From Leucoraja erinacea (Eukaryota): a stretch of 64,000 bases of DNA. Both the position numbers and the translations under genes were made by a program. The notes below the pieces were generated by a model. It did not search any database, was not told the DNA's origin, and was given only the letters and a program-made list of their open reading frames with translations. This document shows, one piece after another, positions 1,708 to 64,000 of this stretch. The stretch is from assembly GCF_028641065.1 (NCBI RefSeq), contig NC_073404.1, forward strand, positions 30,876,001 through 30,940,000, written 5' to 3'. How positions within the stretch are numbered: the first letter of the stretch is position 1; each line of letters opens with the position of its first letter.

Positions 1708-1925
1708 AGAAGGAACTGCAGTTGCTGGAAAATCGAAGGTACGCAAAAAAGCTGGAGAAACTCAGCGGGTGCAGCAGCATCTATGGAGCAAAGGAAATAG
1801 GCAATGTTTAAGGAAATGGGTAACGTTTCGGGCCGAAACCCATGGGGTTTCGGCCCGAAACGTTGCCTATTTCCTTCGCTCCATAGATGCTGCTGCACCC
1901 GCTGAGTTTCTCCGGCTTTTTTGTG
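1708..1925. mobile_element. Palindromic Penelope-derived hairpin element
   Basis: Two ~95-bp inverted arms around gggccgaaaccc/gggtttcggccc; 16-bp direct repeat tacctgtaattattta at 1692-1707 and 1926-1941. Confidence 0.75.
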
Positions 1926-1954
1926 TACCTGTAATTATTTACTTGTTAATTCAT

Positions 1955-8650: not shown

Positions 8651-8815
8651 AGGTAGACAAAAAAATTCTGGAGAAACTCAGCGGGTGAGGCAGCATCTAT
8701 GGAGAGAAGGAATAGGCGACGTTTCTTCTCTCCATAGATGCTGCCTCACCCGCTGAGTTTCTCCAGCATTTTTTGTCTACCTTCGATTTTTCCAGCATCT
8801 GCAGTTCTTTCTTAA
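8651..8815. mobile_element. Palindromic Penelope-derived hairpin element
   Basis: Inverted arms; TSD atgtttctgca at 8640-8650 and 8816-8826. Confidence 0.75.
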
Positions 8816-10400: not shown

Positions 10401-11386
10401 TTCTATTTGTTGTTTTACATCTATGTGGCAACTACGTTTAAAGGGTGGGGATGATTTGAAAGTTGTATCATTTCTGTCTTCAAGCAGTTGGGGCAAGATC
10501 AGTGTTGTCAAGTCAACATGTGTAGGAAGGAACTGCAGGTGCAGGTTTAAACCGAAGATAGGTCATGAGTAGCTAAATATATCCATTGTTGCTGCGCGGA
10601 TGCTAAGGAAGTTTGCTTTACCAGTACTCCTGGGAAAACTAAATGCAGTTCACAATATATCTTGTGATGTGACAGATGTTGAAGTGTTTTGGCTGCCAAT
10701 ATCAGCGTTTATTCTACCAACAGAATATCCAGGTATTTTGTTAACTAGTTTGGAAGTGGGGGTTGTGGCTATACATCTTTCTCCTTGCCCACTCACCCTA
10801 CAGCAAACCTGCCCCTGATATCCCAAAGACGTGTGGGTGTGTAGATTAATTGGCCCTCTGTAAATTGCCCCTCGTGGGTGGGGAATGTGGAATAACATAG
10901 AACTAGTGTGAACGGGGTATCATTGGTCGGCGTGGGCCGAAGGGCCTGTTTCCATGCAATCAGTTAGTAATTAATAATTAAAGCTCATGGAACTCAGTAG
11001 AGATGGGATTTTCTCCATCGCAGTCTGAAGAAGGATCCCAACCCGAAATGTCACCATCCCTTTTCTCCAGAGATGCTGCCAGATGCACTGAGTTACTCCA
11101 ACACTTTGACTGTCTTTAGGATTTTAGAAGCCAGAACTTCCTCCTAATTCCTTGCAAAATGTAATTTTTGAAGCACTTTTTCTACTGACAAAAATCACCT
11201 GAGCACGGGGCGTCCTGATCACTCAGCGGTTAAAATGTGACATTGGTTGGAGTGACAGTGTTTGATCCCTGTCATGAAGCTGCATAGGGATAATGTAATG
11301 GGTCAGGTTAGGGCAGTGACAAGGAGGAACTGAGGGTGATCAAGGCCCTCAGTTCATGGAGCCAATGCTATTACATTGTACCACCA

Positions 11387-12035
11387 GGGGGCGCAGCACG
11401 ATTGGCTGCCCCACCAGCAGTCTGTTTGTTTTTTCATCTTTTTTTAATTTTTAGTGTGTGTTAAAAGTTTGTTTAAATGTTCTCCGGTTTGTTTTATGTG
11501 GGGGGAGAGGGAAACTTTTTCTTACCTTGCCGGAGATGCGATTAATTTTTAGATCGCATTCTCCAGTCACTCTGCGGCCTACCAGCGATGGAGCTGGAGG
11601 CCTCCTCGGACTGACCTTGGGCTCCAGCACAGAGACGTGGACTTACATCGGAGTCGATCCCTTGCCTGGGATAGCTCCAACCGCGGCCTGCGGACTTTAC
11701 ATCGGGAGCTTGCAGTCTCGGGAGAGGCCGTGGATGTCGGGAACTCCAAGGACGTGGAAGGTTCGCCCAGCCCCGACGTGGAAGGTTCGACCAGCCCCGA
11801 CGCCGACACGGGGGAGGGGGAGCTGACATCCCCCCCGATGCAGGAGCTGATCGCCTCGACGCAGAGGTCCCGCCTTCCTGGCCTGTGGAGAGGATTGTGG
11901 AGGAGTCTCTGTGATGGATGTTTATGTTAACATGTGTTCTGTGTGTTCTGTTGCTTTTTATTTGTATGACTGACTAGGCAAATGAAATTCCTCATATGTT
12001 GTGAAACATACTTGGCTAATAAAGTATGATTGTGT
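11387..12035 (+). mobile_element. Non-autonomous LINE-tailed repeat with GC-rich tandem interior
   Basis: CpG-rich interior with 24-bp repeats (gacgtggaaggttcg.ccagcccc); tail aaatgaaattcctc..gctaataaagtatgatt resembles LINE 3' ends. Confidence 0.5.
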
Positions 12036-12722: not shown

Positions 12723-12860
12723 GTAAGTGTGTTACTTGATTCTAACCAATTTGTTTTCTTAAAAGTAAAAGACTTCCTTCTTTATAGGATGCACTGATTA
12801 CGTACAAGTTCAATTTTAAATTTTGAAGTCTTTCGAGTGAGGCTTGAGATAACTTCCAGT

Positions 12861-12993
12861 TCAGTCTGAGGAAGGGTCTCGACCCGAAACGTCACCCTTT
12901 CCTTCTCTCCAGAGATGCTGCCCGTCCCACTGAGTTATTCCAGCATTCTGTGTCCACCTTTGGTTTAAACCACCATCTGCAGCTCTTTCCTAC
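12861..12993 (+). mobile_element. Penelope-derived element with hammerhead-like motif at 12866-12893
   Basis: CTGAGGA-A-GGGTC-TC-GACCC-GAAAC-GTC followed by the family body and the ...catctgcagctctttcct tail. Confidence 0.7.
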
Positions 12994-13309
12994 ATACTCA
13001 ATTTTTTAGTGTAAGTTTAGTTTGTGTCACGTGTAGCGAGATACATGAAAAGCTATTTGTTGCGTGCGAACCAGTCGGCGGAAAGATAATCCACGATTAC
13101 AATCGAGCCGTCCACAGTGTACTGATACAGGATACATTTTCTCCTACATAATGTCACCTGCACTGCACACAGTAGGTCCTGCTGTCAACACGATGGAGTC
13201 AAATCCTTGCAACAATTAGTTTATCCATGCTGGGATTTTTTTTTCTGTTTGGAATACAGAGTTTTATAGTGAAATAATTTATTTGGTCGTGCTTTTATTT
13301 CTGTCAACT

Positions 13310-14270
13310 TGGTACGGCTCTATAGGACTTGGGTTAGACGGGTTTGAGTATTGTGTGCAGGTCAGGTCAGGTCAGGTCAGGTCGCCCCATTACAGGAAGG
13401 ATGCGGAGGCTATGGAGAGGGTGTAGAGGAGATTTACCAGAATGCTGTCAGGATTAGAGGGTTTCACATACAGGGAGAGGTTGGACAGACTTGGACTGTG
13501 TGTTCTGGAACGTCGAAGATTGAGGGGGGACCTGATAGAAATATAACAAATGATGAGAAGCAGAGGTAAGGTAGATGGTGGGAACCTTTTCCCCAGGGTG
13601 GGAATGTCAAACATTAGAGAGCATAGCTCTACGGCTATATATAGCGTGGGTATATGGTGAGAGGGGGCAAGTTTAATGGAGGCAACATTTTATACGGAGC
13701 CTAGAGTCAGGGGTAGGTGGTGGAGGCGGATACGATAGCGGTGTTTAAGAGGCTTTCTGATAGGGACATGGACGTGCAAGGAATAGAGGGATATGGAGCG
13801 TGTGCAGGCAGATGAGATCAGTTTGACTTGGCATCGTGTTTGGCACAAAGCATTCATCCCTTTGCTGTACTGTTCTATATCCACAAATTCTAGAAGTAGA
13901 ATTAGGCCATTCGGCCCATCAAGTCTACACCATTCAATCATGGTGATTTCTGCCTCCTAATCCCATTTTCCTGCATTCTCCCCCCATAATCCTCGACACC
14001 CATTCTGATCAAGAATTTGTCTATCTCTGCCTTAAAAATATCCACTGACTTGGCCTCCACAGCCCTCTGTGGCAATGTGTTCCACGGATTAACAACCCTC
14101 TGACTAAAGAAGTTCCATCTCACATCCTTTCTAAAGGAGCGCCCTTTCATTCTGAGGCGGTGACCTTTGGTCCTGGACTCTCTGTGTCTTTCATTATTCT
14201 GTAAGGTTCAATGAGGTCCCCCCTCAACCATCTAAACTCCAGCGAGTACAGGCCCAGTGCTGACATGTTG
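13310..14270. mobile_element. Two convergent CR1 3' fragments (+ about 13310-13880; - about 13890-14270)
   Basis: Remnants ERV.RRFTRML.GL on + and FFSQRVVN.WN.LPQ.AVEA on - (ORF 13938..14150). Confidence 0.8.
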
Positions 14271-15109
14271 AATGACATATTCTGTTTAGTTTTGGCTACC
14301 ATGGGATTATTTTGATTTTCACATTTATTTAATTAATCTAGTATCTATGATTAATAGACCTTAACTTATCCTGTTAGAAAACATTTAAAATTTGATCAGA
14401 CCGTTTATTTCAGGACCCCATCTGAAGAAGGGTCCCAACCCGAAACATCATCTATCCGTTCCCTCCACAGATGCTACCTGAGCCGCTGAGTTCCTTCTGC
14501 ACTTTCTGTTTTGTTCTTGTATAGTCTGCTAGAATTCCTCGGTATAGTGTATATAATACTCTTGTGCATTACTGCTTTAGCCAATTATTCCATGCTAACT
14601 ATTGCGCTAACTATTTTCAAATTGTGCTGAAATGGCTGGAGTGTAGTGTGCTGACTTTTGCCACAGCTGGTGTTCAGCTATTGAAACCAAAGCCATTTCA
14701 CGACGTCACAATTTGGGACTGTTAGCAGATCATTGTGCTGCAGGCTGCACAATCAATTGTGCAAAGTCCAGCTGAAAAACATGCTCATGCTGCGGTGTGA
14801 GATTGCCTTCCTGATCCTGCAGCAGGTGTAGAGCCCAACTGAGAGCCCAATTGAGTTCAGTGAGGCATGTAGAGCAAGGTCAGTCTGAAGAAGGGTCTCG
14901 AGCCGAAACGCCACCCATTCCTTCTCTCCAGAGAGTTGCTGCCTGTCCCGCTGAGTTCCTCCAGCACAAAATTCCTTTTGCTCAAAATTCCAGCATCTGT
15001 AGATTCTTGTGTCCATAAATGTTTTTTAAGTGTCTGGAATATTTCATAGATCTTTATTTAATTCAAAATATTTGAAGATGGCACTTTATTTAATTCAAAA
15101 TATTTGAAG

Positions 15110-17899: not shown

Positions 17900-18660
17900 A
17901 TAAGAGCAGAATTAGGCCATTCAGCCCATCACGTCCACTCCGCCATTCATTCTTGGCTGTTCTATCTTTCTCTCTCAACCCCATTCTCCTGCCTTCTCCC
18001 CGTAACCTGACACCCGTTCTAATCAATCTCCATCGTAAAAGTATCCACTGACTTGGGCCCCGCAGCCTTCTGTGGCAATAAATTCCACAGATTCACCACC
18101 ATCTGACTAAAGAAATTCCTGCTCATCTTTCTAAAGATACGTCCTTTAATTCTGAGGCTGTGCCCTATGATCATGGAATCTCCCACTAGTCGAAACATCC
18201 CCTCCACATCTTCTCTATCCATCACCTCTGTGAATGGGGTATGAAAGATGCTTCAGGAGTAGGTTAGCATTGGGAAGAAGCTGCTCTTGAGTCTGCATGT
18301 CTGGGCTTTCTAGCTCCTGTGTGTTCTCCCAGAAGGTAGTGGAGAGAAGAGGGAATGTCCAGGAAGGTTGGATGTTGGACGTTGGAGAAGAGGGTCTGCA
18401 GCCTTCCTGATACAACGCACCGTCAATGCACTGGGTGAAAGAATGTGATGAGCCTGTGATGGCCTGGGCTGCCTTCACCGCTCTGTGCAAGTCGAGGGCT
18501 GAGCAGTTACCACGCCAGGTTGAGATGCATCCCATCAGAATACTTTGTAAAACGTATCTGTCAATGTTGGAGAGGATCCTCGTGGACAAGCTGAATCTAC
18601 CCAAACGCCTAAGAAAGCAAACACTGCTGCTGTTGTTCCTCAAGCTGGTTCTGGACTGAT
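17900..18660 (-). mobile_element. CR1 3' fragment (about 17900-18220) next to a Rex1/Babar-like fragment (about 18225-18660)
   Basis: ORF 18019..18225 (GHSLRIKG..FFSQ.VVNLWN) and ORF 18215..18802 (FLRRL..F.LS..IL...SILMGCI..W.GNCS). Confidence 0.75.
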
Positions 18661-29169: not shown

Positions 29170-29397
29170 GTATGTAGGAAGGAACTGCAGATGTTGGTTT
29201 ACATTGAAGATAGACACAAAATGCTGGAGTAACTCAGCGGGACAAGCAGCATCTCAGGAGAAAAGGAATGGGTGACGTTTCGAGTCGAGACCCTTCAGCA
29301 GTCTGAAGAAAGGTCTCAAACCAAAACGTCTCCCATTCCCTTCTCTCCAGAGGTGCTGCCTGTCCCGCTGAGTTACTCCAGCATTTTGTGTCTATCT
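29170..29397. mobile_element. Inverted-dimer Penelope-derived element retaining CTGAAGA (29303-29309)
   Basis: Two inverted arms; TSD tcaaggtaaa at 29160-29169 and 29398-29407. Confidence 0.75.
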
Positions 29398-29950: not shown

Positions 29951-31818
29951 GTAGGTGCATCGCTGTGGATTTAGTGTCTGAAGTTGGTTCAATTTATAAT
30001 GTCTGCAATGTCTTGCTTTTCTTTTGTTTTCCTGATTCACAATTTCTCTCTATTTGCCTCTCACAAACTGGATTTGGTGTGATAGAACGGCAGGCAGGGC
30101 TGCCATGTACATCTCCACGCCTTCCACAGATGGTGCTCTAGAGCCGAATGCCGCAGTGCCACCCAAGGTAGAGCCACTGCCGATTTTCCCCCTCTCTCCC
30201 AGTTAGCTGGGCACCTTGTGTCTGCACGGTCCTCAGTCACACAAACCCAGCTCGCCGCCTGTGAATGCCAGCGTCAAACTGAATTGCAATTTGAATCAGG
30301 GTCTCCCATTGTGAGAGACTCTTCCATTTGGGAGTCCCATCTCAAAATGGAAACCCAAGATGACAATCAATTGGCATTATTCTGAGCAAACCACAAACAG
30401 GCAAGTTCCATGAACTCCAGCCTCCCTGTTCTTTGTGACCTGCAGTACTCAATGTGTTCTGTAATCTTGCGCTTTTGTGGAAGGTATTATGCTGTAAAAA
30501 GACGGTGGTGTGGCTTGTGGTTGCTGTAGAACGCCTTCATATAAAACAAACCAGCTTCTTATTCCTTTACCTAAAGATTTACCTGTCATTTCTACTTTCA
30601 ATGTAAAGAGCTGTGCATAGTGGGTGTGAGACGGAGTAGAGATCTGTAGCAGGCATGCATCTAGCAAACAAAGTTGCAGCGAGTTTGCTTGTAGGTTGAT
30701 CAGAGCTTTCATCTGAGTCGTTCTGTGTCCAGACTTGGTGACAGCGGTGTATTGAAAGAATAAAGTAATCTGGAGAGCTGAGTGATCTACTGCAATTTAT
30801 TTTCCTGATTCTTCTTGGATATTCTTGAGCTTTCAACAACGTTGTCACTGTCTGCTGAACAATTGGCTTAGAACTTTGGCCAATTCCAGAAATATCGAAG
30901 CACCCAACTTGCCCTGATACAAAGCACGTTATAATAAAGAGGTTGGTGGAAAGAAACCAAAGCTCGCAGTTCTTTCCATCATTTTGGGGACATTTTGAGT
31001 CGTGCACGACTACTATCTACATCCTATTTTATTTCACTGAATCAGAGTGAATTCTTTCTCAAGATCCGTTTAGTGTAGAGTCCTAGTGTAAAGCGGATTT
31101 GTGTTTTGTATAATCTTGTTTACTGAGCATGTTCCACAGTCTTGAGCAACATAAAGTATAATTTGAAGAAGGGTCTCAACCCGAAATGTCATTTATTCCT
31201 TCTCTCCAGAGATGCTGCCTGGCCCGCTGAGTGACTCCAGCATTTTGTGTCTATCTTCAAAGTATAATTGGATCTTGACTGCCAGGTTATCATGCCTCAC
31301 CCTATCAGAGAGATTCCCTTTGTTCTACTACATCCCTCCTCAACCTCCTCAGCCGCCTGCTACTTAACGTGTCCTCTTTCCTTTTCAGTTCTGATGAAGG
31401 GTCCCAGACCTGAAATGGTCACCATTTTTTTTTCCACAGATGCTGCCTGATCTGCCAAGCATTTTGACCATTTTCTATTAGGTTCTCAACATTATTGCTC
31501 TTTAAACAGTCAGCTATGTTTATGTTATGTTACAGCAGTTCTTCCTGTGGTCTGCATTTTACTAAGTAATATGATCGACATTTATGCTTGTGCATATGGG
31601 ATGAAATTGTATCAATAAATAAAATCAGTAGTACTTCATTATCGCATGTGCCTAGGTACTGTTCTTTTGTGTACACAGTGCAGTAACAATCTGACTCTGC
31701 ACAGACAATCATACTTAAATAAAAGTCTATAGGATGATAGATTACACTGAGTCGGTACACAAGAGTTGTCACGAATCTGCCACTATTTTGTAGCATTCAA
31801 GTTGTTAAAAATGCAGAG

Positions 31819-32076
31819 TTGTAGCTTGGCCACAAAGGCAGGCAGCGGTGGGTCATAGTTGCAGGGTGGACCACAAAGGCAGCCAGCGGTGGGTCGTAGT
31901 TGCAGGGTGGGCCACAAAGGCAGGCAGCCGTGGGTCATAGTTGCAGGGTGGACCACAAAGGCAGCCAGCGGTGGGTCGTAGTTGCAGGGTGGGCCACAAA
32001 GGCAGGCAGCCGTGGGTCATAGTTGCAGGGTGGGCCACAAAGGCAGGCAGCCGTGGGCCATAGTTGCAGGGTGGGC
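31819..32076. repeat. 41-bp G-rich minisatellite (about 6 units)
   Basis: Unit gttgcagggtgggccacaaaggcaggcagccgtgggtcata, with a second variant type. Confidence 0.9.
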
Positions 32077-32369
32077 CTGGTCAGGCAACGTTGCTGCCGT
32101 TCTCCATTGGTGCTGCAAGCCAAGTCCGATCCACACGAGTCCCAGGCTGCCCATTCCACCGATGCCTTGAATTGGCCACGTCCACCACTGTGCTGTGCCC
32201 TCCCCTACATCAAGTGGTCACCAAGGCAATCCAACTGAGTGGGAACAGCGCTGAGAACTATGTCTGTTAAAACTCGGCGTTCCATGCACCCACAGTGAAG
32301 ATGTTTCCCCTCAGGTTACCATTAAAGTTGTCGCTTTTTTCTTTCCCTTAAACCCATGTCGTCAAGATT

Positions 32370-32815: not shown

Positions 32816-33989
32816 TTGATTCCCCTGCCCGGGGTGGGTAAAGATATGGAGCTGGGCAAAAGCACGGGGGATGACTCGTGTGGGTGTGCAGTGGTGGAGC
32901 AGAGGAAGAAAGTCTGAGATATTTGGAGAAGGGTAATGAAACACAAATTAGCAGACATTAAAAAAAGTTGTAATTTCTGCCTGTGTGTGGTGGACATCAA
33001 TACACCAAGCTACTGTTCTAACTTTATGTTTTTGAAGTCGGGGGTTTAGTTTCTCTAGCTAGTCTGAATTGGGGACACTGTTGATGTGTTTTCATGGTAC
33101 CAGAAGGTATCTTCCAGCACAAAAGTGTTTTAACAACAAATCCTGTGTAAAAGATTGCGTTACAAAACACCAAGATCTCTTCCCTGCTGAGCATTTGAGT
33201 TTGCTTGTCTCCGTCAATTAAATATCATTTCAGATCTCAAAATAGTTCTAATTGTGTAATGGGAAAGATGATGCTGATGCAGCCTGCATTTATTTTGATC
33301 AGCAGGGTTTCCGAACTAACAACCAAGCACTTTGGATTGGGAAATTGCATTCCTCGTTGGCTGGCTTTTTCTCAGCCGCTGTCTCTGGTGGTTCTGGTGG
33401 TGCTTTGGTACAAATAACCAAATATTAAGCAGGTGGACTTGTGATGTCTTACAGCAACATACAGGAGCTTCACGGGTTATCAGTAACCTGACCTACAGAA
33501 ATCCCACCACTCAAATCCATTTTAAAGCATTTTTCAAGCTAGCAATGATAAAATGTTTAGTGGTATTCATTAAAGGCTGGTTGCAGAATATATTCCATTA
33601 GTTTAATTCTGAGTGGTTCTAGACCGATAAATTAATGAAGTGAATTGTGTAGAACAATACCACGTTGGTCGTCTGAAGAAGGGTCTCGACATGAAATGCC
33701 ACCCACTCCTTCTCTCCAGAGATGCTGCCTGTCCCGCTGAGTTACTCCAGCACTTTGTGCCTGTCTTCAATTTAAACCAGCATCTGCAGTTCCTTCTTCC
33801 ACCACATTGGTAGTTATGGACGCCATCGAAAGTGAATGTGTGTGACTGGCTGGGAAATAGGCTTGTATAGTTCTCAGGAAGGGAATCCCTGCCTGACCCA
33901 CGCACCACCTGTATTTATGTTGATAGGATAGTGACACTATCGAGAAGATTTTATGTTTTTTTGGGTACTGCTTATGTAGAGACCCTGGT

Positions 33990-34400
33990 TCCCCACAGCA
34001 CCAGAGACCCTGGTTCGTGACCTTGGATGCTGTCTGTGCGGAGTTTGCATGTTCTCCCTGTGACCTCGTGAGTGCTCCGATGTCCACTCTCACCCCAAAC
34101 ACATGCAGGTTTGTAGGTTTAAGAAGGAATTGCAGACGCTGGAAAATCGAAGGTAGACAAAAATGCTGGAGAAACTCAGCGGGTGCAGCAGCATCTATGG
34201 AGCGAAGGAAATAAGCCGAAACGTTGCCTATTTACTTCGCTTCATAGATGCTGCTGCACCCGCTGAGTTTCTCCAGCATTTTTGTCTACCTCAGGTTTGT
34301 AGGTTAATAGGCCTCTCGAAATTACCCCTAGTGTGTAGGGAGTGGATGAGAAAGTGGGAGAATATCGAACTAATATGAACAGGTGATCGAATGTTCGACA
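33990..34400 (+). mobile_element. HE1-type SINE with a hairpin element inserted at 34120-34291
   Basis: SINE sequence caggtttgtaggtt is duplicated at 34106-34119 and 34292-34305 around the hairpin. Confidence 0.85.
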
Positions 34401-35186
34401 TGGATGTTTTCAAGAGAGAGTTAGATTTATCTCTTGGGGCTAACGGAATCCAGGGATATGGGGAGAAAGCAGGAACAGGGTACTGATTTTGGATGATCAG
34501 CCATGATCATATTGAATGGCAGTGCTGGCACGAAGGGCCGAATAGCCTACTCCTGCACCTATTTTCTATGGACTAGGTGGGACAAAGGGCCTGTTTCCAT
34601 TATGTATCAATCCAAAAAAATATCAATCTGCAATTTTCGGTGGTCGACAAAAATGCTGGAGAAACTCAGCGGGCGAGGCATCATCTATGGAGCGTAGGAA
34701 ATAGGTGACGTTTCATCACCCATTTCCTTCGCTCCATAGATGCTACCTCACCTGCTGAGTTTCTCCAGCATTTTTGTCCATCTTCAATTTTCCAGCATCT
34801 GCAGTTCCTTCTTAACCAATCTGCAATTTTAAGTCATTCACTGAATTGTGATCATCACATCTGCCATTTAATGTTGCACATGTTTATATTCTGCTGCATT
34901 GTGTAACTCTGGAGATATTGAGAAAACAACGTGCCCTTCTGCTCACTCCGAACTGTTTGTAATGCAGTGTGACTGAGGTGGAACGTGATATCAGGCTGCT
35001 GGTTACCATGTGCCCATGCTTCTGCTTGTCCTTGTGTACACGTGTCCTCTTCTACAGCACCACTGTTGCTGAGGTGCATGCATCACGAGGTTTGAGACCA
35101 GGAAATTAGTGATATCATCCGCTCAAAATAGACAATATCAAATTGTCTCTTCTTCAAAAACAAATAGGAAAAGATAAACACAAAAC

Positions 35187-35700
35187 ACATCTCCGGAGAA
35201 CATGGATAGGTGACGTTTCACAGAGTGCTGGAGTAACTCAGCGGGTCAGGCAGCATCTGTGGAGAACATGGATAGGTGACGTTTCACAGAGTGCTGGAGT
35301 AACTCAGCGGGTCAGGCAGCATCTATGGAGCTAAGGAAATAGCTCCTTTATTTCCAGAAGGATTTCGGCCCGAAAAGTTGCCTATTTCCTTAGCTCCATA
35401 GATGCTGCTGCACCATAACTCAGCGGGTCAGGCAGCATCTGTGGAGAACATGGATAGGTGACGTTTCACAGAGTGCTGGAGTAACTCAGTGGGTCAGGCA
35501 ACATCTGTGGAGAACATGGATAGGTGACGTTTCACAGAGTGCTGGAGTAACTCAGCGGGTCAGGCAGCATATCTGGAGAAATAGGATGCTCTCCCAATCC
35601 ATATTCTCTAGATCAAAATCCATGTTCTCCAGAGGTGCTGCTTGACGTGCTGAGTTACTGCAGCATTTTGTATCTATGGTGTAAACCAACATCTGCAGTT
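35187..35700. repeat. Tandem array of a 66-bp unit derived from the Penelope-type element, with an embedded cassette
   Basis: Unit cagagtgctggagtaactcagcgggtcaggcagcatctgtggagaacatggataggtgacgtttca is repeated. Confidence 0.85.
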
Positions 35701-38293: not shown

Positions 38294-38339
38294 GTAAAGC
38301 TCACAAGTAGACACAAGCAATTGCACATGCTAGTTTACA

Positions 38340-38890
38340 AACAAAACACAGAGTGCTGGAGTAACTCAGCGGGTCAGGCAGCATCTGTGGAGAACATGGA
38401 TAGGTGACGTTTCACAGAGTGCTGGAGTAACTCAGTGTGTCAGGCAGCATCTGTGGAGAACATGGATAGGTGACGTTTCACAGAGTGCTGGAGTAACTCA
38501 GCGGGTCAGGCAGCATCTATGGAGAACATGGATAGGTGACGTTTCACAGAGGGCTGGAGTAACTCAGCGGGTAAAGGCAGCATCTACGGAGCTAAGGAAA
38601 TAGGCAACGTTTCGGGCCGAAACCCTTACGGGTTTCGGCCCGAAACGTTGCCTATTTCCAGTAGGATTTCGGCCCGAAAAGTTGCCTATTTCCTTAGCTC
38701 CATAGATGCTGCTGCACCATAACTCAGCGGGTCAGGCAGCATCTGTGGAGAACATGGATAGGTGACGTTTCACAGCAGAACCCTTCTTCAGGAGAAACGT
38801 CACCTGTCCTTCTTGTCCACACCTGCTGCTGAACCCACTGAGTTACTCCAGCACTCTGTGTCTTATTTTGTAAACCAGCATCTGCTGTTG
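38340..38890. repeat. Second 66-bp tandem array with the same embedded hairpin cassette
   Basis: At least four units, starting about 50 bp after the SSH2 donor site at 38293. Confidence 0.85.
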
Positions 38891-39828
38891 CTTGTATCTT
38901 TTTTTTTGTGGATAAAATCTATTACAATTAACCACAGATGAAGTAAGCAAAGATAATCTAAAATATTTATTTAATTGCAATGAGCTACATTTGTCCTTGA
39001 ACAAATACCATTTTTGTTCAAATTAGGCTCGTGTCCATTAACATTTGTAATCTTTCCTATTCTGTTTCCGGCGGATAGAGGTGCTGCCTCACAGCACCAG
39101 AGACCCGGGTTCAATCCTGACCTTGGGTGCTGTCTATGTGGAGTTTGCATGTTCTCCCTATAACCGCCTGGATTTCCACCAGGTGCTCCGGTTTCCTCCC
39201 ACATCCCAAAAGACGAGTGGGTTTATAGTTTAATTGTCGATCTGTAAATTGCCCTTGTGTGTAGGGAGTGGATGAGAAAGTGGGATAACATAGAACTAAT
39301 TTGAACAGGTTGTCGGTGTGGTCTCGGCGGGCCGAATGGCATCTTTCCATGCTGCAGCTTTCAATCGATCAGCGCCTGGTACTTTGATGTTGGAGTTTTG
39401 CCATTCAGCTCCTAGAACAGAATCTCATAATTCTGGGATGAATTCCAATCCTAAAACATCTTATCTGCCAGCTGTACACATGTAGAGCACACTGAATACA
39501 GTTCCTGAGGGCTTAAGGGAATGAATAGAAGATGGATTGGATCTGGACCCTTCTTCTGTCAGATTGGAGTAGGGGGGAGAAAACTGGGAGCGGGGCAAGT
39601 GATAGGTAGATATAGGTGAGCGGAGGGGTGAGTGGGAGATACGTGGAGTTACGACCTTTGTCATTATCTCCACCCAGACTGAAGAAGGGCCCTGACCCAA
39701 AACCTCACCTGTCCATTCCTTCCTCAGATGCCCCACTGAATTTCCTCCAGCATGTTGTATTTTGTGCCAGATTCTGACACCTGCAGTTCCTTGTGTCTCC
39801 AATGTAGAAACATGCTTAAGAAACTCCT

Positions 39829-40038
39829 AGGTAGACAACAGTGCTGGAGAAACTCAGTGGGTGCAGCAGCATCTATGGAGCGAAGGAAATAGGCAACTTT
39901 TCGGGCCGAAACCCCTCGGGTTTCGACCCGAAAAGTTGCCTATTTCCTTCGCTCCATAGATGCTGCTGCACCCGCTGAGTTTCTCCAGCACTTTTGTCTA
40001 CCTTCGATTTCCCAGCATCTGCAGTTCCTTCTTAAACA
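39829..40038. mobile_element. Near-perfect hairpin Penelope-derived element
   Basis: ~85-bp inverted arms plus a one-sided tail cttcgattt..catctgcagttccttcttaaaca. Confidence 0.78.
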
Positions 40039-40720: not shown

Positions 40721-42787
40721 GAAAATCTGGCATCCTTATCTTTCAGCAAGAAGTCTTCCTTAACCAGGTCCCAGTCTTTAAATGTCATTTCTGTGAAAGA
40801 AATAGTGACGGGGATAGAGTCCAACCAGAATACTGGTGTGTTGCAGACAAAGGCAGAGAATGTCACCAGTGTCCAGAGCCAAATGCCAAAGAGGAATACA
40901 GTTCATGAACTATCTGCAGATTTCCACTGGCCTTCTGAAAACGGCATTGCTGCAAACAAAATTGGTGCAAGCAAGTCTTTAGTTGACGACGGTGAGGTCA
41001 AGCAAAATGGCGGTCTTTGGGTAAACGTACCTGTCGAGAGCTGTGATGATTGCCAGGGGGCAACTTTGGAGAAGTCTGGGCAGGATGAGCTCTTGGGCCA
41101 CCAGCAGGTTGCTAAATGGTGCCCTGGGTCAGTGAGACGTGCGACCAAGGAGTTTGAGGAGCGACTGAAGCAAGAGCACGAACAACAGCCGTGTGTGGCC
41201 ACAGCGTTGCCCACGCGCAAACCTTCTCGTGCCGACGGGGACGCGGCTGGTGACGCCGCGGTGACCAGCAAGAGCGGCGAGGTCTCTCCTGAAGCCTGCT
41301 TGTTGCCGGATAGAGAACAGGGAAGTATCACTATCGGATGCAATGAGCTTCTGAATCCAGAACCAGCCCCGGAGATGCTGTCCAATGTGATCGGGCTCCC
41401 ACTGCAACCCAAAGTAGACCAATTGCAGACTGCGCCTGGCTCTGTGAGCGCTGTAGAACACAGGGTGGTCCATGCTTTTGAAACTTTAGAGGGTTTTGAT
41501 TCATACGCCCAGCTTCCGAAGAAAATTGAGATAATTGAATATACCCATATATTTAAATCAGCAACTCCGCAAGTAGGCATGGATGATAAGAGAGACGAAA
41601 AGATGAAGCGTGAATCTCCAGCAACAGAAAGTGACCTTGCCATACTTTCTATCACTGAAGATGAATCTCCAGCCAAGGAAAATGAAGATACCAGCAAGTC
41701 TCCCGGCGATCTACAGATGGTAGAGGTTCCTTCCACCGATGCTCAGCCACAGCCGCATCTCTGGCCATTATTGGATCCTGCAGGTTTAGCCCCACAAGAC
41801 AGTGCAGAAAGTGAAGCCATGACCTTGCCGATTGCTAGTCCTTTGGGTGAGATAACCCACGTCCCATCAGAATGTGAGGTTGCTGCATTTGACCATCACA
41901 GTGCCCACTTGCCAGTAGACGGATGCCCAACCCCAGTCCTCCACCTGGGAGGTGTCACCCTGTCAAGTACGGATACCGACGCAGAAATCCCTGATGAGGA
42001 AACTTGCCATTTGGAGCTTCAAGATGTCAGCCAAGGAATGGCACGTTTACAAAGCACAGATGTCGGCTGCACAATACTCACCCCTGACGATTTAGAACGC
42101 AGCTTCAGCAGGTTTGACCAGAGTGTCCGAGAGATGCAGAAGATGCTAAGTTTCTCGTACCTTGATCACAATCTTCCGCACCGCTGCAGCAATGACAGTC
42201 TAAACCACCTGAGTGGTCCCCTGGCGTGTGGGAGCCAGCAGGCGGAGGAGATTGGAGCAAAGATAAGACGAGCTGGTCTCACGACACCGTCTCAGATGAA
42301 GCGGTCAGCATCGATCGCCAAGCTGGGTTGCCTCGAACTCTCCACGGATGAGTTATGCAAGACCATGGATCCGACCACGGCACTCCAAGCACTTTGTGAT
42401 TGCGGGCAAGACCCAGCGTGGACTGTGGGAAGGACAGGGGAGGTGAGAACGGGGTGCGCTGGGGAAGAGGAGCCCAACAAAAAGAAGTGTGTTTCCCTCT
42501 CCGTCCTCCACGACGGGCAGACGGAGCAAGGTGAAAGATCTGAGAGCAAAGCTGCGGAGAATCCTCCAATACAACATGCCAAAGACAGCGAGCCTGCCCC
42601 TCATGGTTTAGTGAGAGCAAGGCCCAACCTTTCCCAGCTGGAGCCTTCTGACACAGACCCACCTTGTCTCACATCATTGACACCCTCAAAGCCTCATCAC
42701 AACCATCACAGAAATCATCCGTTAAAGCAAATCAAATCAGCCGGTGGGAGGAAGTGGACTGCAAGTCCTCTGTATAACACCATGTAA
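40721..42787 (+). CDS. SSH2: SSH2 last coding exon: ENLASL...ISVKEIV...KWCPGSVRRATKEFEERL...LPKKIEIIEYTH...MKRSASIAKL...SPLYNTM*
   Basis: ttctgcag| acceptor is in frame with ORF 40793..42787; SSH2-specific motifs and C-terminal YNTM*. Confidence 0.95.
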   Translation, partial: ENLASLSFSKKSSLTRSQSLNVISVKEIVTGIESNQNTGVLQTKAENVTSVQSQMPKRNTVHELSADFHWPSENGIAANKIGASKSLVDDGEVKQNGGLWVNVPVESCDDCQGATLEKSGQDELLGHQQVAKWCPGSVRRATKEFEERLKQEHEQQPCVATALPTRKPSRADGDAAGDAAVTSKSGEVSPEACLLPDREQGSITIGCNELLNPEPAPEMLSNVIGLPLQPKVDQLQTAPGSVSAVEHRVVHAFETLEGFDSYAQLPKKIEIIEYTHIFKSATPQVGMDDKRDEKMKRESPATESDLAILSITEDESPAKENEDTSKSPGDLQMVEVPSTDAQPQPHLWPLLDPAGLAPQDSAESEAMTLPIASPLGEITHVPSECEVAAFDHHSAHLPVDGCPTPVLHLGGVTLSSTDTDAEIPDEETCHLELQDVSQGMARLQSTDVGCTILTPDDLERSFSRFDQSVREMQKMLSFSYLDHNLPHRCSNDSLNHLSGPLACGSQQAEEIGAKIRRAGLTTPSQMKRSASIAKLGCLELSTDELCKTMDPTTALQALCDCGQDPAWTVGRTGEVRTGCAGEEEPNKKKCVSLSVLHDGQTEQGERSESKAAENPPIQHAKDSEPAPHGLVRARPNLSQLEPSDTDPPCLTSLTPSKPHHNHHRNHPLKQIKSAGGRKWTASPLYNTM

Positions 42788-48656: not shown

Positions 48657-48700
<44 letters not shown>

Positions 48701-49166
48701 GAATTAGTATATTCGGCCCATCGAGTCTACCCCACCATTCACTCATGGCTGATCTATCTCTCCCTCCTAACCCCATCCTCCTGCCTTCTCCACATAACCC
48801 CTGACACCTGTACTAATCTATCTGCTTTAAAAATATCCATTGACTTGGCCTCCACAGCCTTCTGTGGCAAAGAATTCCACAGATTCACCACCCTCTGACT
48901 AAAGAAATTCCTCTTCATCTCCTTTCTAAAGGAACGTTCTCTTCAGATTGTATTTGCCTTCCTTACTAACACTCGCACGTGCAAATTAACCCTTGGGGAA
49001 CTCTGCACCAGCATTCCCATGTTCCTTTGTGGAATCATCCTCTCCACATCCCGTCTACCTCCTATTATCCGGCTCCTCCATTCATCTGGACAAAATTACG
49101 AGAAAGCACTTAAAATCCCCCCGGAAATGTGGTGCCCAGGCCGGGTGAGATGGCCGATCTCATCGA

Positions 49167-50540
49167 AACAGAAAAATAGGTGCAGGAGTAGGCCATTCGG
49201 CCCTTCGAGCCAGCACCACCGTTCAATATGATCATGGCTGATCATCCAAAATCAGTGCCCTGTTCCTGCTTTTCCACCATATCTCTTGATTCCGTTAGCC
49301 CTAAGAGCTTTATCTAACTCCCTTGAAAACATCCAGTGACTTGGCCTCCACTGCCTTCTGTGGCAGAGAATTCCACAGATTCACCAACCCTGCGTGAGGA
49401 AGGTTTTCCTCATCTCAGTCCTATATGGCCAACCCCTTATTTTTAAACTGTGAGCCCCTGGTTCTGGACTTCCCCAACATCGGGAATGTTTTTCTTGCAT
49501 CTAGCTTGTCCAATCCTTTAAGAATTTTATATGTTTCTATAAGATATCCTCTCATCCTTCAAAATTCCAGTGAATACAAGCCTAGTCGACCCATTCTTTC
49601 AGCATATGTCAGTCCTGTCATCCCGGGAATTAACCTAGTGAACCTACGCTGCACTCCCTCAATAGCAAGAATGTCCTTCCTCAAATTAGGAGACCAAAAT
49701 TGCACACAATACTCCAGGTGCAGTCTCACCAGGGCCCTGCGCAACTGCAGTAGGACCTTGCTTCTAAACTCAAATCCTCTTGCAATGAAGGCTAGCATGC
49801 CATTAGCTTTCTTCACTGCCTGCTGTACCTGCATGCTTACTTTCAGTGACTGACATACAAGCACACATAGGTCTCGTTGCACCTCCCTTTTCCTAATCTG
49901 ACACCATTCAGATCATAATCTGCCTTCCTGTTCTTGCCACCAAAGTGAATAACCTCACATTTATCCACATTATACTGCATCTGCCACGCATCTGCCCACT
50001 CACCCAACCTGACCAGGTCACCCTGCAGCCTCATAGCATCCTCCTCGCAACTCACATTTCCACCCAACTTTGTGTCATCTGCAAACTTGGATGTCACATT
50101 TAATTCCCACTAAATCGTTAATATATATTGTAAATAATGGGTCAATAGACAATAGGTGCAGGAGCAGGCCATTCGGCCATTCAATGTGATCATGGCTGAT
50201 CATCCCCAATCAGTACCCCGTTGCTGCCTTCTCCCCATATCCCCTGACTCCGCTATTTTTAAGATCCCTGTCTAGCTCCCTCTTGAAAGTATCCAGAGAA
50301 CCGGCCTCCAACCGGTCCCAACACCGAGCCTTGCGGCACCCACTAGTCACTGCCTGCCATTCTGAAAAGGACCCATTAATTCCTGCTCTTTGCTTCTTGT
50401 CTGCCAACCAGTTCTCTATCCATGTCGATACCCTCCCCCCAATAACATGTGCTCTAATGTTGCACACTAGTCTCTTGTCCTCCTCAGCACAGCTACCAAT
50501 TTGGTTGGCCCAATCTATATGTAGATTGAAGTCAGGCATG
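49167..50540 (-). mobile_element. CR1 LINE fragment with another CR1 3' end nested at about 50143-50310
   Basis: ORFs 49843..50097 (KFADDTKLGG), 49559..49882 and 50210..50647 (WIENWL..KQR.GINGSFSEW..VTSG). Confidence 0.88.
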
Positions 50541-50729
50541 ATAACTGCGCATGGGTATTTCCGCGGCTGATTGGCGGGTGGACTCTGCCCTCTGCGGCCG
50601 AGGCTCATGAACTCTGACCTTGCCGGAGCCGGCAGATACGTTCCCATGGCCGATTTTGCGGCCGGTATCTCGGCCCCTCCCCTTGGCGGTCAAGGCGGAA
50701 CGATCCGGTACCGTTGGACTCGTCACGGA

Positions 50730-62589: not shown

Positions 62590-64000
62590 GGCATTTGGAT
62601 GGGCAAGGGCTGATTAGGGATAGTCTGCATGGTTCTGTATGTGGGAGGTCGTGTCTCACAAATTTGATTGATTTTTTTTTAAGACGTGACCAAAAATGTT
62701 GATGAGGGCAGAGCTGTAGATGTTGTGTACATGGACTTCAATAAGGCGTTCAACAAGATTCTGCATGTAGGCTGCTCTGGAAGGTTAGATCGCATGGGAT
62801 CCAAGATGAGATATCTGAAAGGATAACAAATTGGCTCCATGGAAGGAAGCAGAGGGTGATGGTGCAAGGTTGCTTCTCAGACTGGAGGCCTGTGACCAGT
62901 GGTGTGCCTCAGAGTTTGGGCCCGTTACTGTGTGTCATCTACATCAATCATTTGGATGAGAACATACAGGGCAAGGTTAGCAAGTTTGCTGATGATACAA
63001 AAGTTAGTGGTTTTGCAGATAGTGAAGATGGTTGTAAATGATTGCAGCTGGATCTGGATCAATTGGCCAGGTGGGCGGAGGAATGGTTGATGGAATTTAA
63101 TACAGAGAAGTGTGAGGTGTTGCATTTTGGGACGTTGAACAAGGGCAGGACCTACACAGTAAATGGTAGGCCTCTGGGTAGTGTTGTAGAGCAGAGTGAT
63201 CCAGGAGTACAAGGGCATGGTTTCTTGAAGGTTGAATCGCAGGTAGATAAGGTGGTCAAAAAGGCTTTTGGCACTTTGGCCTTCGTCAGTCAGAGTATTG
63301 AGAATAGAAGTTGGGAGGTCATGTTGCAGTTGTATAAGACGTTGGTGAAACCACATTTCGAATATTAACCATATAACCATATAACAATTACAGCACGGAA
63401 ACAGGCCATCTCGGCCCTACAAGTCCGCGCCGACACAACTTTTTTCCCCTTAGTCCCCATCTGCCTGCACTCATACCATAACCCTCCATTCCCTTCTCAT
63501 CCATATGCCTACCAAATTTATTTTTAAATGATACCAACAAACCTGCCTCCACCACTTCCACTGGAAGCTCATTCCACACCGCTACCACTCTCTGCGTAAA
63601 GAAGTTCCCCCTCATGTTACCCCTAAACTTCTGTCCCTTAATTCTGAAGTCATGTCCTCTTGCTTGAATCTTCCCTATTCTCAAAGGGAAAAGCTTGTCC
63701 ACATCAACTCTGTTTATCCCTCTCATCATTTTAAAATATTGTGTTCAGTTCTGGGCACCATGTTATAGGAAATATATTGTCAAGCTTGAAAGGGTTCAGA
63801 AAAGATTTACGAGGATGTTGCCCGGACTAGAGGGTGTGAGCTATAGGGAGAGGTTGAGTAGGCTGGGTCTCTATTCCATGGAGCGCAGGAGGATGAGGGG
63901 AGATCTTATAGAGGTGTACAAAATCATGAGAGGAATAGATCGGGTAGATGCACAGAGTCTCTTGCCCAGAGTAGGAGAATCTAGGCCCAGAGAAGGTCAG
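62590..64000 (+). mobile_element. CR1 RT fragment running off the window end, interrupted at 63367-63734
   Basis: VDVVYMDFNKAF, VTSGVPQ, KFADDTK, then LVKPHFEY | CVQFWAPCYRK. Confidence 0.9.
63367..63734 (-). mobile_element. HER1-like CR1 3' end nested in the CR1 above
   Basis: ORF 63388..63729; TSD aatatt at 63361-63366 and 63735-63740; (ggttatat)n tail. Confidence 0.88.

What the first reader, a model, noticed from the sequence alone, without database searches (positions are those of the whole stretch)
12866..12893. Dispersed minimal hammerhead-ribozyme motif in an abundant short repeat family
Seen: CTGAnGA + short stem-loop + GAAAC + GTC/ATC recurs at 12866 (CTGAGGA A GGGTC TC GACCC GAAAC GTC), with variably decayed copies at 11025, 14422, 14885, 29303, 31391 (CTGATGA AGG..CCT GAAA), 33673, 39679, 62528 and on the - strand near 54725-54758. 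Established: CUGANGA...GAAA...UH is the hammerhead catalytic core. Penelope-like retroelements carry minimal type-I hammerheads whose helix III is reduced to a short palindrome (here ACGU), thought to work as dimers. Inference: these are non-autonomous, ribozyme-bearing Penelope derivatives (retrozyme-like), about ten of them in 64 kb, most on the sense strand of the SSH2 pre-mRNA. Caveat: helix I is only 2-4 bp and many copies have an A-C mismatch at the base of helix II.
Basis: partly seen in the sequence, partly recalled or inferred. Interest (0 to 1): 0.85.

Follow-up and report, generated by a model that had tools for sequence, protein, structure and literature searches.

The report
Penelope-type repeat with decayed hammerhead motif
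A very common 135-letter mobile repeat in this fish genome carries at its front end the minimal hammerhead-ribozyme motif known from Penelope-like retrotransposons, but almost all copies are decayed and self-cutting looks doubtful, so it is an ordinary new member of a known kind.

Summary
The motif is real: 12866-12893 reads CUGAGGA-A-GGGUCUCGACCC-GAAA-CG-UC. It heads a ~135-nt repeat with 77 fragments (9.9% of the window). Twelve of 21 aligned heads keep CUGANGA. Only 1 (strict) or 2 (lenient) keep every hammerhead feature.

The family shows the structure the literature treats as peculiar to Penelope-like elements:
- variable 9-16-bp target duplications;
- 17 head-to-head inverted pairs;
- a one-sided 29-41-nt 'tail' in 6 of 6 duplication-bounded fold-backs, with the motif about 70 and 100 nt upstream of two alternative 3' ends.

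So 'Penelope-derived, non-autonomous' is supported, although no Penelope RT/GIY-YIG gene lies in the window. 'Retrozyme-like' is not supported: there are no tandem units carrying the motif.

Self-cleavage is doubtful:
- helix I is 2 bp;
- a competing stem is about 10 kcal/mol more stable;
- no Rfam hammerhead model matches, even at E<=10;
- core columns are no better conserved than the rest;
- RNA reads show no ends at the predicted site (also true of a proven Penelope hammerhead).

This is a known kind with a new member. The scan has already flagged the same family many times elsewhere in this genome.

The parts
12862..12998 (+). Full-length solo copy of the ~135-nt repeat. It starts at CAGT-CTGA and ends ...CTTTCCTACATACT.
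   Evidence: (model 2-118)
12866..12872 (+). CUGANGA box (C3-A9). 12873 is the unpaired A between A9 and G10.1.
12874..12885 (+). Helix II hairpin GGGUC-UC-GACCC (effectively 4 bp plus a CUCG loop), with a G10.1-C11.1 base pair.
12886..12893 (+). GAAA (G12-A15.1), C15.2 G16.2 (the ACGU palindrome that stands in for helix III), and U16.1 C17. Predicted cut after 12893.
11025..11052 (+). Decayed head: helix II broken, GAAATGTC.
14422..14449 (+). Decayed head: GAAACATC.
14885..14912 (+). Decayed head: GAAACGCC, U16.1 lost.
29303..29330 (+). Decayed head: G12 changed to A. It lies in the right arm of a fold-back.
31391..31420 (+). Decayed head: CTGATGA, one extra base in helix II, GAAATGGTC.
33670..33800 (+). 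Solo copy bounded by a 10-of-11 target duplication ACCAC(G/A)TTGGT. Its 5' end is 3 nt before CTGA, and the head is decayed (GAAATGCC).
39679..39706 (+). Decayed head (AAAACCTC). This copy extends further 5' into a pyrimidine-rich stretch.
62528..62555 (+). Decayed head (GAAACATC), joined head-to-tail to a 3' piece of another copy (62482-62526). This is the only partial tandem seen.
54737..54764 (-). Head with all core boxes intact but one internal mismatch and a G-U in helix II.
38764..38791 (-). Head with intact boxes and a broken helix II.
1708..1928 (.). Head-to-head fold-back with a 13-of-13 target duplication and a 31-nt one-sided tail. The arms meet at helix II, so there is no CUGANGA.
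8653..8815 (.). Fold-back with a 12-of-13 target duplication and a 35-nt one-sided tail.
29170..29395 (.). Fold-back with an 11-of-12 target duplication and a 40-nt one-sided tail.
34122..34291 (.). Fold-back with a 15-of-16 target duplication and a 29-nt one-sided tail.
34638..34814 (.). Fold-back with a 15-of-16 target duplication and a 36-nt one-sided tail.
54287..54477 (.). Fold-back with an 8-of-9 target duplication and a 41-nt overhang on one side (5 nt on the other).

Best explanation
The site is the front end of a ~135-nt non-coding retroelement. This element is the terminal cis-acting module of a Penelope-like element (PLE).

In PLEs the minimal hammerhead lies at the pseudo-LTR/ORF junction. 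The reverse transcriptase starts copying at two internal sites roughly 100 nt downstream of it. A severely 5'-truncated or non-autonomous copy therefore consists of [hammerhead motif + ~70 or ~100 nt]. That is the layout seen here.

- The motif's anatomy.
- The family: 77 fragments, 9.9% of the window.
- Variable 9-16-bp target duplications.
- Head-to-head pairs whose outer ends are one 'short' and one 'long', differing by 29-41 nt.

Inferred:
- A Penelope RT/GIY-YIG enzyme encoded elsewhere in the genome copies the RNA by target-primed reverse transcription.
- It primes on both DNA strands, or snaps back, which makes the fold-backs.
- In the source elements the hammerhead would process multi-copy transcripts, probably only with protein help.

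The copies in this window are neutral, CpG-decaying relics, and nearly all are catalytically dead. Even the intact one (12866) is unlikely to cut efficiently by itself.
For: Motif anatomy. 12866-12893 matches four features that Cervera & De la Pena 2014 list as emerging beyond their search descriptor: the core boxes in type I order, an unpaired nucleotide between 9 and 10.1, G10.1-C11.1, and palindromic 15.2-16.2. That paper also reports a Drosophila virilis Penelope variant with a 2-bp helix I.

[quoted passage not shown] Observed here:
- 17 head-to-head pairs, my tally from the nhmmer table (junction flanks).
- 6 of 6 duplication-bounded fold-backs carry a one-sided overhang of 29, 31, 35, 36, 40 or 41 nt.
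- Fragment 3' ends cluster at model positions >=116 (27 of 77) and 93-101 (14 of 77).

Frangieh 2024 explains the tail as two adjacent internal RT start sites, located ~85-92 nt past the hammerhead cut site in the anole Poseidon element. Here the two ends lie ~70 and ~100 nt past the predicted cut.

Retrotransposition. Target duplications are 9-16 bp and variable in length (7 elements), there is no poly(A), and 5' truncation points vary.

Helix II. The two subfamilies differ at two helix II positions, and both changes keep pairing only as G-U on the motif strand.
Against: - No Penelope RT or GIY-YIG coding sequence is in the window. Pfam on 20 of the 38 ORFs >=120 aa found only a weak zf-RVT hit. 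A six-frame regex found no GIY..YIG. The only two YxDD hits are KFADDTK motifs, which I recall as CR1/L2-type. The link to an autonomous partner is therefore inferred from insertion structure alone.
- No Rfam hammerhead family matches at gathering score, or at E<=10 on 101 nt or on the whole window.
- Helix II is 5 bp, against the 6-8 bp described. Helix I is 2 bp.
- The hammerhead-like fold of 12866 is worth -3.9 kcal/mol against an MFE of -13.7. The helix II pair probability is ~0.
- The competing stem (UCUG/CAGA plus AGAAGGG/UCCUUCU) is as well kept across 11 long copies as the hammerhead helices: 82.6% against 78.5% of cells paired.
- No covariation exceeds shuffles.
- Column identity of the motif part is 0.85, against 0.83, 0.85 and 0.81 for the rest of the repeat.
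- Copy termini are not at the predicted cut site. Solo copies start 3-4 nt before CUGA, and fold-back junctions scatter over model positions 2-45.
- Family-wide RNA reads (85% likeness, depth ~9,300 in run X24) show no begin or end pile-up at 12893/12894 (table 6).
Confidence: 0.7

Rival explanations
1. Chance look-alike. The repeat is a SINE mobilised by some LINE. Under this reading CUGAAGAAGG...GAAAC is conserved because it forms one strand of a long element-specific hairpin, a structure recognised by the enzyme, and not because it is or was a ribozyme core.
For: - The competing stem that uses the CUGA and AGAAGG letters is ~10 kcal/mol more stable than the hammerhead fold and is kept in 82.6% of cells.
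- The core is no better conserved than other blocks of the repeat.
- Rfam hammerhead models do not match.
- Helix I is only 2 bp.
- CR1-like LINE pieces are frequent in the window.
- About 100 of ~1,650 loose-ended reads in X24 join the module to an antisense CR1-like 3' end.
Against: - A full match to core order, bulge, G10.1-C11.1 and the ACGU palindrome is expected 0.045 times per 64 kb, yet here it is the ancestral state of the family.
- The one-sided 29-41-nt tail and the inverted partners are reported as absent from LINE-type insertions.
- The module's 3' end does not resemble the CR1-like tail seen in the window.
Confidence: 0.15
2. Active retrozyme system. The repeats would be transcribed, cut by paired hammerheads, circularised, and spread through small circular RNAs.
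For: - The family is heavily represented in RNA reads.
- A 2026 preprint argues that animal retrozymes derive from Penelope pseudo-LTRs.
Against: - No tandem units carry the motif. The 66-bp arrays span model positions 16-83 only.
- At most 2 of 21 heads are intact, and they lie on opposite strands 42 kb apart.
- No read ends fall at the cut site.
- Copy ends do not coincide with the cut site.
Confidence: 0.05
3. DNA-transposon fold-back or MITE family. The long inverted arms would be terminal inverted repeats.
For: Many copies are near-perfect long hairpins, and they score as generic miRNA-precursor-like hairpins in Rfam below threshold.
Against: - Target duplications vary from 9 to 16 bp.
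- One arm always carries an extra 29-41 nt.
- The junction position between arms differs from copy to copy.
- Solo single-arm copies have their own target duplication (33670-33800).
Confidence: 0.03
4. The head is a minimal HDV-like ribozyme that cuts at its own 5' end, which would explain the discrete 5' boundary. This is another first-stage note on this genome (s1-910247).
For: At least 7 solo copies begin within 8 nt upstream of CTGA with unrelated flanks. One has a target duplication abutting the start.
Against: No HDV-like, CPEB3 or related Rfam family matches at E<=10. I could not draw a nested double-pseudoknot. The boundary sequence TCAGTC also reads as an initiator-like start site (my recollection of the consensus).
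Confidence: 0.03

Closest known systems
Minimal hammerheads of Penelope-like elements (Cervera & De la Pena 2014, PMC4209133)
   Same: - Type I order of the core boxes.
- No helix III, only the A15.1-C-G-U16.1 palindrome, read as a dimerisation helix.
- An unpaired nucleotide between 9 and 10.1, and a G10.1-C11.1 pair.
- Copies mostly dispersed as single, often truncated, elements, some close together on opposite strands.
   Different: - Helix II is 5 bp, against 6-8 bp.
- Helix I is 2 bp, against 4-5 bp.
- Cartilaginous fishes are not named in the parts of the main text I read (parts 1-2 of 4).
Drosophila virilis Penelope hammerhead variant (same paper)
   Same: [quoted passage not shown]
   Different: The fly motif has a bulge within helix II and a 2-nt palindromic insertion in helix III. 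Its copies are nearly identical (97 of 130 identical), whereas these copies are heavily decayed.
Poseidon element of Anolis carolinensis, PAc (Frangieh et al. 2024, PMC11167929)
   Same: - The hammerhead lies ~100 nt upstream of two adjacent internal RT start sites whose spacing gives the 30-40-nt 'tail'.
- The enzyme cuts and extends both DNA strands.
- No RNA-seq reads begin or end at the hammerhead cut site.
- Cleavage needs the element's protein and is not required for insertion in vitro.
   Different: PAc is autonomous, and its ORF starts at stem II. The module here has no long ORF, and no RT gene is nearby.
Non-LTR retrozymes of animals (Cervera & De la Pena 2020, PMC7229834; Li, Clavereau & Pollet 2026 preprint)
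   Same: A non-coding hammerhead-bearing retroelement thought to depend on Penelope enzymes.
   Different: Retrozymes are tandem 150-450-bp units with canonical type I hammerheads and circular RNA products. Here the copies are dispersed or inverted, the motif is minimal, and no tandem unit carries it.

Membership tests
Penelope-type minimal hammerhead (Cervera & De la Pena 2014) | Core boxes CUGANGA ... GAAA ... UH in type I order around a helix II hairpin | tested here: met
   12866-12893. CUGANGA is kept in 12 of 21 aligned heads and GAAA in 14 of 21.
Penelope-type minimal hammerhead (Cervera & De la Pena 2014) | [quoted passage not shown] | tested here: met
   A at 12873. The column is A in 19 of 21 copies.
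Penelope-type minimal hammerhead (Cervera & De la Pena 2014) | G10.1-C11.1 base pair | tested here: met
   G-C in 11, G-U in 6 and unpaired in 4 of 21 copies.
Penelope-type minimal hammerhead (Cervera & De la Pena 2014) | Palindromic 15.2-16.2, so that two copies can build helix III | tested here: met
   C-G at 12890-12891. C-G in 9 and U-G in 4 of 21 copies. The modelled dimer with a 4-bp intermolecular helix III scores -12.7 kcal/mol, against a dimer MFE of -35.7.
Penelope-type minimal hammerhead (Cervera & De la Pena 2014) | Long helix II (6-8 bp) and helix I of 4-5 bp (2 bp in the D. virilis variant) | tested here: not met
   Helix II is 5 bp, or 4 bp plus a tetraloop. Helix I is 2 bp, and a descriptor requiring >=3 bp finds 0 sites. 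These are descriptive rather than strictly defining features.
Penelope-type minimal hammerhead (Cervera & De la Pena 2014) | Location in the pseudo-LTR of an element encoding a telomerase-like RT and a GIY-YIG endonuclease | not testable with these tools
   No such ORF is in the window.
Penelope-type minimal hammerhead (Cervera & De la Pena 2014) | Self-cleavage after C17 | tested here: inconclusive
   No read begin or end pile-up at 12893/12894 in three raw-read RNA runs. The same negative result is reported for the active anole element.
Penelope-like element insertion structure (Craig 2021; Frangieh 2024) | An inverted 5'-truncated copy abutting the 5' end | tested here: met
   17 head-to-head pairs among 77 fragments, my tally from the nhmmer table (junction flanks).
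Penelope-like element insertion structure (Craig 2021; Frangieh 2024) | A 30-40-bp 'tail' extension at one end only | tested here: met
   One-sided overhangs of 29, 31, 35, 36, 40 and 41 nt in 6 of 6 duplication-bounded fold-backs. 3' ends are bimodal.
Penelope-like element insertion structure (Craig 2021; Frangieh 2024) | Partial tandems forming pseudo-LTRs | tested here: inconclusive
   One head-to-tail junction (62482-62526 joined to 62528-62575). The 66-bp arrays are internal pieces.
Non-LTR retrozyme (Cervera & De la Pena 2020) | Tandem repeats of 150-450 bp, each unit carrying a type I hammerhead | tested here: not met
   Tandem Repeats Finder lists no such array. The 66-bp units lack CUGANGA and helix II.
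Non-LTR retrozyme (Cervera & De la Pena 2020) | Canonical helices with loop 1-loop 2 tertiary contacts | tested here: not met
   Helix I is a 2-bp open stem with no loop 1.
Rfam hammerhead families (types I, II, III, HH9, HH10) | Covariance-model score at or near the gathering threshold | tested here: not met
   No hammerhead family is listed at gathering score or at E<=10.
MITE / DNA-transposon fold-back | Target duplication of fixed length and symmetric terminal inverted repeats | tested here: not met
   Duplications are 9, 11, 12, 13, 13, 16 and 16 bp, and the arms are unequal.

The most novel reading that the evidence does not exclude
The hammerhead core may be kept in the source elements as part of the RT-loading structure, or as a strictly protein-assisted switch, rather than as a self-cutter.

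Independent full-length insertions start only 3-4 nt before CUGA, at an initiator-like TCAGTC. The element's own RNA therefore cannot form helix I at all, and the core letters are locked in an ~11-bp competing stem.

If this reading is right, the family would be a natural case of a ribozyme scaffold turned into a protein-binding platform, with cutting possible only in read-through multi-copy transcripts. Under the same reading, the strict 'one short end, one long end' rule in fold-backs (6 of 6) would reflect a dimeric enzyme priming on both target strands from two different start sites.
Probability: 0.15. Interest if true: 0.5.

Novelty: new member of a known kind. Interest (0 to 1): 0.25.

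Why it matters
The finding shows that about a tenth of this stretch is made of the terminal module of a Penelope-type retroelement. It gives a clean natural illustration of the two-start-site 'tail' and the both-strand priming recently shown in vitro for one reptile element. That helps repeat annotation: these hairpins can be mistaken for MITEs or miRNA precursors. It adds no new ribozyme class and gives no evidence that host transcripts are cut.

Tried and rejected
- **tRNA-derived SINE on the opposite strand.** The reverse complement has A-box-like and B-box-like strings by eye. ARAGORN finds 0 tRNAs, and Rfam lists no tRNA match at E<=10. The fold-back geometry (tails outward, one complete arm) fits only the motif strand as the RNA sense.
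- **CR1-tailed composite SINE.** Read joints (13927 to 12861 and to 14880; 12922 to 13904) link the module to the antisense 3' end of a CR1-like LINE. This concerns roughly 100 of ~1,650 loose-ended reads in X24. The window's own copies show unrelated contexts. I treat these as nested insertions.
- **Longer 5' extension.** RNA reads continue upstream of 12861, 14880 and 11021 into a pyrimidine-rich consensus (agreement only 0.44-0.70). Three window copies (39683, 53424-, 61916) resemble it by eye, but blastn finds no repeat among them. The extension does not lengthen helix I.
- **Cleavage-defined ends.** 5' ends and fold-back junctions do not pile up at model position 24/25.
- **Consensus folding.** RNAalifold on 11 long copies gives only -1.04 kcal/mol.
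- **Reaching the rest of the genome or relatives.** Two metagenome scans and one viral scan gave 0 hits. A full-text search for a 20-mer found 0 papers.
- **Paper searches.** The searches for hammerheads or Penelope in cartilaginous fishes gave nothing specific. I saw only the listings. I therefore cannot say whether this family is in print under another name. Repbase and the supplementary files of the 2014, 2020 and 2026 papers were not visible and may hold it.
- **Strand of the RNA.** The single-cell runs X22 and X23 put about 6 times more reads on - than on + over 12874-13014. I could not establish the library chemistry, so I draw no conclusion.
- **Host gene.** The Atlas gives only 0.83 'Slingshot-like' for the 664-aa ORF at 40793-42787 (+).
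Full report
**Observation.** The window reads CTGAGGA A GGGTCTCGACCC GAAA CG TC at 12866-12893, followed by ACC. In hammerhead numbering this is:
- C3-A9
- one unpaired A
- a helix II hairpin closed by G10.1-C11.1
- G12-A15.1
- C15.2 and G16.2
- U16.1 and C17

There is no helix III loop, so A-C-G-U is a four-letter palindrome.

The loose pattern CTGANGA-N4-30-GAAAC occurs 8 times against 1.17 expected, and 0 of 100 shuffles reach 8. A strict descriptor that I wrote finds one site only, 12866-12893. That descriptor requires the boxes, a 0-1 nt bulge, helix II of at least 4 bp, paired 15.2/16.2 and UH. First-order Markov resamples of the window give a mean of 0.045 such sites (200 resamples).

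**The family.** Iterated nhmmer from 12850-13000 finds 66, then 74, then 77 fragments. Of these, 42 are on + and 35 on -, and together they cover 6,062 of 61,510 non-N bases, or 9.9%.

A full unit runs from CAGT-CTGA... to ...CTGCAGTTCCTT plus a short subfamily-specific end (CCTACA.., CTTAAA.. or GTGTCT..). That is about 135 nt, with no poly(A).

The motif therefore sits at the extreme 5' end of the unit. Upstream of CAGT, the solo copies share nothing except where the upstream DNA is an inverted partner.

Among 21 aligned heads:
- 12 keep CUGANGA.
- 14 keep GAAA.
- 9 keep C-G at 15.2/16.2.
- Only 12866 keeps everything. 54764 on the minus strand also qualifies if one internal helix II mismatch is allowed.

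The losses are mostly CpG-type transitions such as GAAATGTC, GAAACATC and CAAAAC. This is neutral decay of old copies.

**What kind of element it is.** Seven elements have clear target duplications of 9, 11, 12, 13, 13, 16 and 16 bp. Variable length argues for target-primed reverse transcription and against a DNA transposon.

I count seventeen pairs of fragments lying head-to-head, tallied from the nhmmer table (junction flanks). Their junctions fall at different model positions, from 2 to 45.

In all 6 fold-backs bounded by a target duplication, the self-complementary part reaches one duplication. At the other end an unpaired 29, 31, 35, 36, 40 or 41 nt remains. Over all 77 fragments, 3' ends cluster at model positions >=116 (27 fragments) and 93-101 (14 fragments).

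The literature gives this as the hallmark of Penelope-like elements:
- Craig et al. 2021 (passages) describe high 5' truncation, an inverted 5'-truncated copy abutting the 5' end, and a 30-40-bp tail often present at one end only. They state that these are not seen in LINE-type insertion.
- Frangieh et al. 2024 (parts 1-2 of 4 read) show for the anole Poseidon element that reverse transcription starts at two adjacent internal sites whose spacing is the tail.
- In that element the enzyme cuts and extends both DNA strands, and the hammerhead lies ~85-92 nt upstream of the first start site.

In the present family the predicted cut site lies ~70 nt before the short end and ~100 nt before the long end. 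The module is thus best read as the minimal terminal piece of a Penelope-type element: the hammerhead motif plus the region the enzyme binds and starts from.

The geometry, with tails pointing outward and one arm complete, also fixes the motif strand as the RNA sense.

**What could not be shown.** No Penelope enzyme gene is in the window:
- Pfam on 20 of the 38 ORFs of at least 120 aa gave only a weak zf-RVT hit.
- A six-frame regular-expression scan found no GIY...YIG.
- That scan found two YxDD sites, both KFADDTK, which I recall as CR1/L2-type.
- Exact-pattern scans of metagenome contigs (2) and viral contigs (1) returned nothing, so I could not look at relatives.

An earlier follow-up on another piece of this genome (s1-878683) states that the repeat is the 3' end of a Penelope-like element. 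I could not check that statement directly. My support for it comes from the insertion signature only.

**Does the ribozyme work?** The evidence is mostly negative.
- *Helix I.* It is U-A plus G-C only. The next two positions pair in 6 and 4 of 21 copies, and 40.5% of helix I cells are paired. With helix I of at least 3 bp the descriptor finds nothing.
- *Upstream sequence.* The longer upstream sequence seen in RNA reads is pyrimidine-rich and does not extend helix I.
- *Folding.* For 12858-12904 the hammerhead-like fold is worth -3.9 kcal/mol, against -13.7 for the MFE. In the MFE, GAGGAAGGGU pairs with ACCCUUUCCUUC. The ensemble probability of the helix II pairs is about 0. A dimer built on the 4-bp ACGU helix scores -12.7, against a dimer MFE of -35.7.
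- *Competing stem.* The same competing stem (UCUG/CAGA plus AGAAGGG/UCCUUCU) appears in most copies. It is paired in 82.6% of 121 cells across 11 long copies, against 78.5% of 65 cells for the hammerhead helices. Neither exceeds shuffles in covariation.
- *Rfam.* It lists no hammerhead family at gathering score, at E<=10 on 101 nt, or at E<=10 on the whole window.
- *Conservation.* Mean column identity is 0.85 for the motif part and 0.83, 0.85 and 0.81 for the three following thirds (non-CpG columns). The core is well conserved, but no more so than other blocks.
- *DNA ends.* Neither solo 5' ends nor fold-back junctions gather at the predicted cut.
- *RNA ends.* Reads from three raw-read RNA runs were laid at 85% likeness. 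They pile up on the module: depth about 4,350 + 4,950 in X24 over 12874-13014. No position in it shows begins or ends reaching a fifth of the local depth (table 6).

This last negative carries little weight. Most family members are dead. The libraries are oligo-dT or single-cell. Frangieh et al. report the same absence for an element whose hammerhead does cleave, but only with its protein, and whose cleavage is dispensable for insertion in vitro. Cervera and De la Pena likewise found low activity in vitro, and only for dimers.

**One point in favour of an RNA structure on the motif strand.** The two main subfamilies differ at two helix II positions (GGGUCUCGACCC against GGGUUUCGGCCC). Both changes keep pairing as G-U on this strand and would be C-A on the other. 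Two changes are too few to weigh heavily.

**Comparison with known systems.** The motif meets four of the features that the 2014 paper lists as arising beyond its descriptor. It shares the 2-bp helix I with the Drosophila virilis Penelope variant.

[quoted passage not shown] No tandem unit carries the motif, and the 66-bp arrays at 35188-35586 and 38316-38627 span model positions 16-83 only.

The preprint found non-LTR retrozymes in its one cartilaginous-fish genome, with mean consensus length 363 bp. It does not name the species in the text I searched.

I found no paper that describes this particular family. Supplements and Repbase were not visible.

**Verdict.** The Penelope origin is supported by structure (confidence 0.7) but not yet by an enzyme link. 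The 'retrozyme-like' label and an active ribozyme are not supported.

This is a new member of a known kind. The same family has been noted many times by this scan on other pieces of this genome: 324 notes hold the words hammerhead, Penelope and ribozyme. Interest is low to moderate.

Noticed in passing
window 13891-14270 (+); also 17905-18182, 48700-48936, 49309-49391, 53850-54265, 56071-56153, 59541-59939, 62053-62452: Copies of the 3' end of a CR1-like LINE. At 13891-14270 it is antisense. The minus strand carries ORF2 C-terminal ORFs (70 and 51 aa), a GGCC..GGCC hairpin and an 8-mer microsatellite tail. The CR1 naming is recalled, not computed. RT bits with KFADDTK lie near 62985 (+) and 50085 (-).
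   Followed up: partly
window 35188-35586, 38316-38627, 53260-53430: 66-bp tandem arrays made of an internal piece of the same repeat (model positions 16-83), joined ...CTCTG|TGAAACGTC. They are combined with small hairpins of the GGGTTTCGGCCC subfamily, and the same composite recurs at three loci. They lack CUGANGA and helix II, and how they arose is unexplained.
   Followed up: partly
window 12861-12866, 14880-14885, 11021-11025, 33670: Independent solo copies begin within a few bases of the same point, at a TCAGTC that looks like an initiator element. RNA reads from other copies run on upstream into a pyrimidine-rich stretch. This may be a transcription start in the source element.
   Followed up: no
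window 12874-13014, 14848-14988, 13861-14142: In the two single-cell RNA runs, reads lie on the minus strand about 6-8 times more often than on the plus strand over the module, and 2.6-5.6 times more often over the neighbouring CR1-like piece. The bulk oligo-dT run is symmetric. The library chemistry is unknown, so the sense of the RNA was not assigned.
   Followed up: no
window 49425-52213: Plus-strand ORFs of 142, 403 and 122 aa, with a weak zf-RVT match in the 403-aa one, are followed by an A53 run at 52161-52213. This looks like a poly(A)-tailed LINE fragment unrelated to the repeat studied.
   Followed up: no
window 31828-32077: A 41-bp tandem repeat with 6.1 copies and 92% matches.
   Followed up: no
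window 10850-10990 (-), 11041-11181, 11887-12027: Other high-copy repeats with RNA read depth in the hundreds to thousands at 85% likeness. One contains GGCCCTTCGGCCC-type hairpins. They were not classified.
   Followed up: no
window 39855-39978, 54347-54454, 34170-34273, 8671-8762, 38600-38657: The fold-back copies score as miRNA-precursor-like or generic hairpins in Rfam, below every gathering score (45 bits or less against 55-81). This is a likely source of false miRNA calls in this genome.
   Followed up: no
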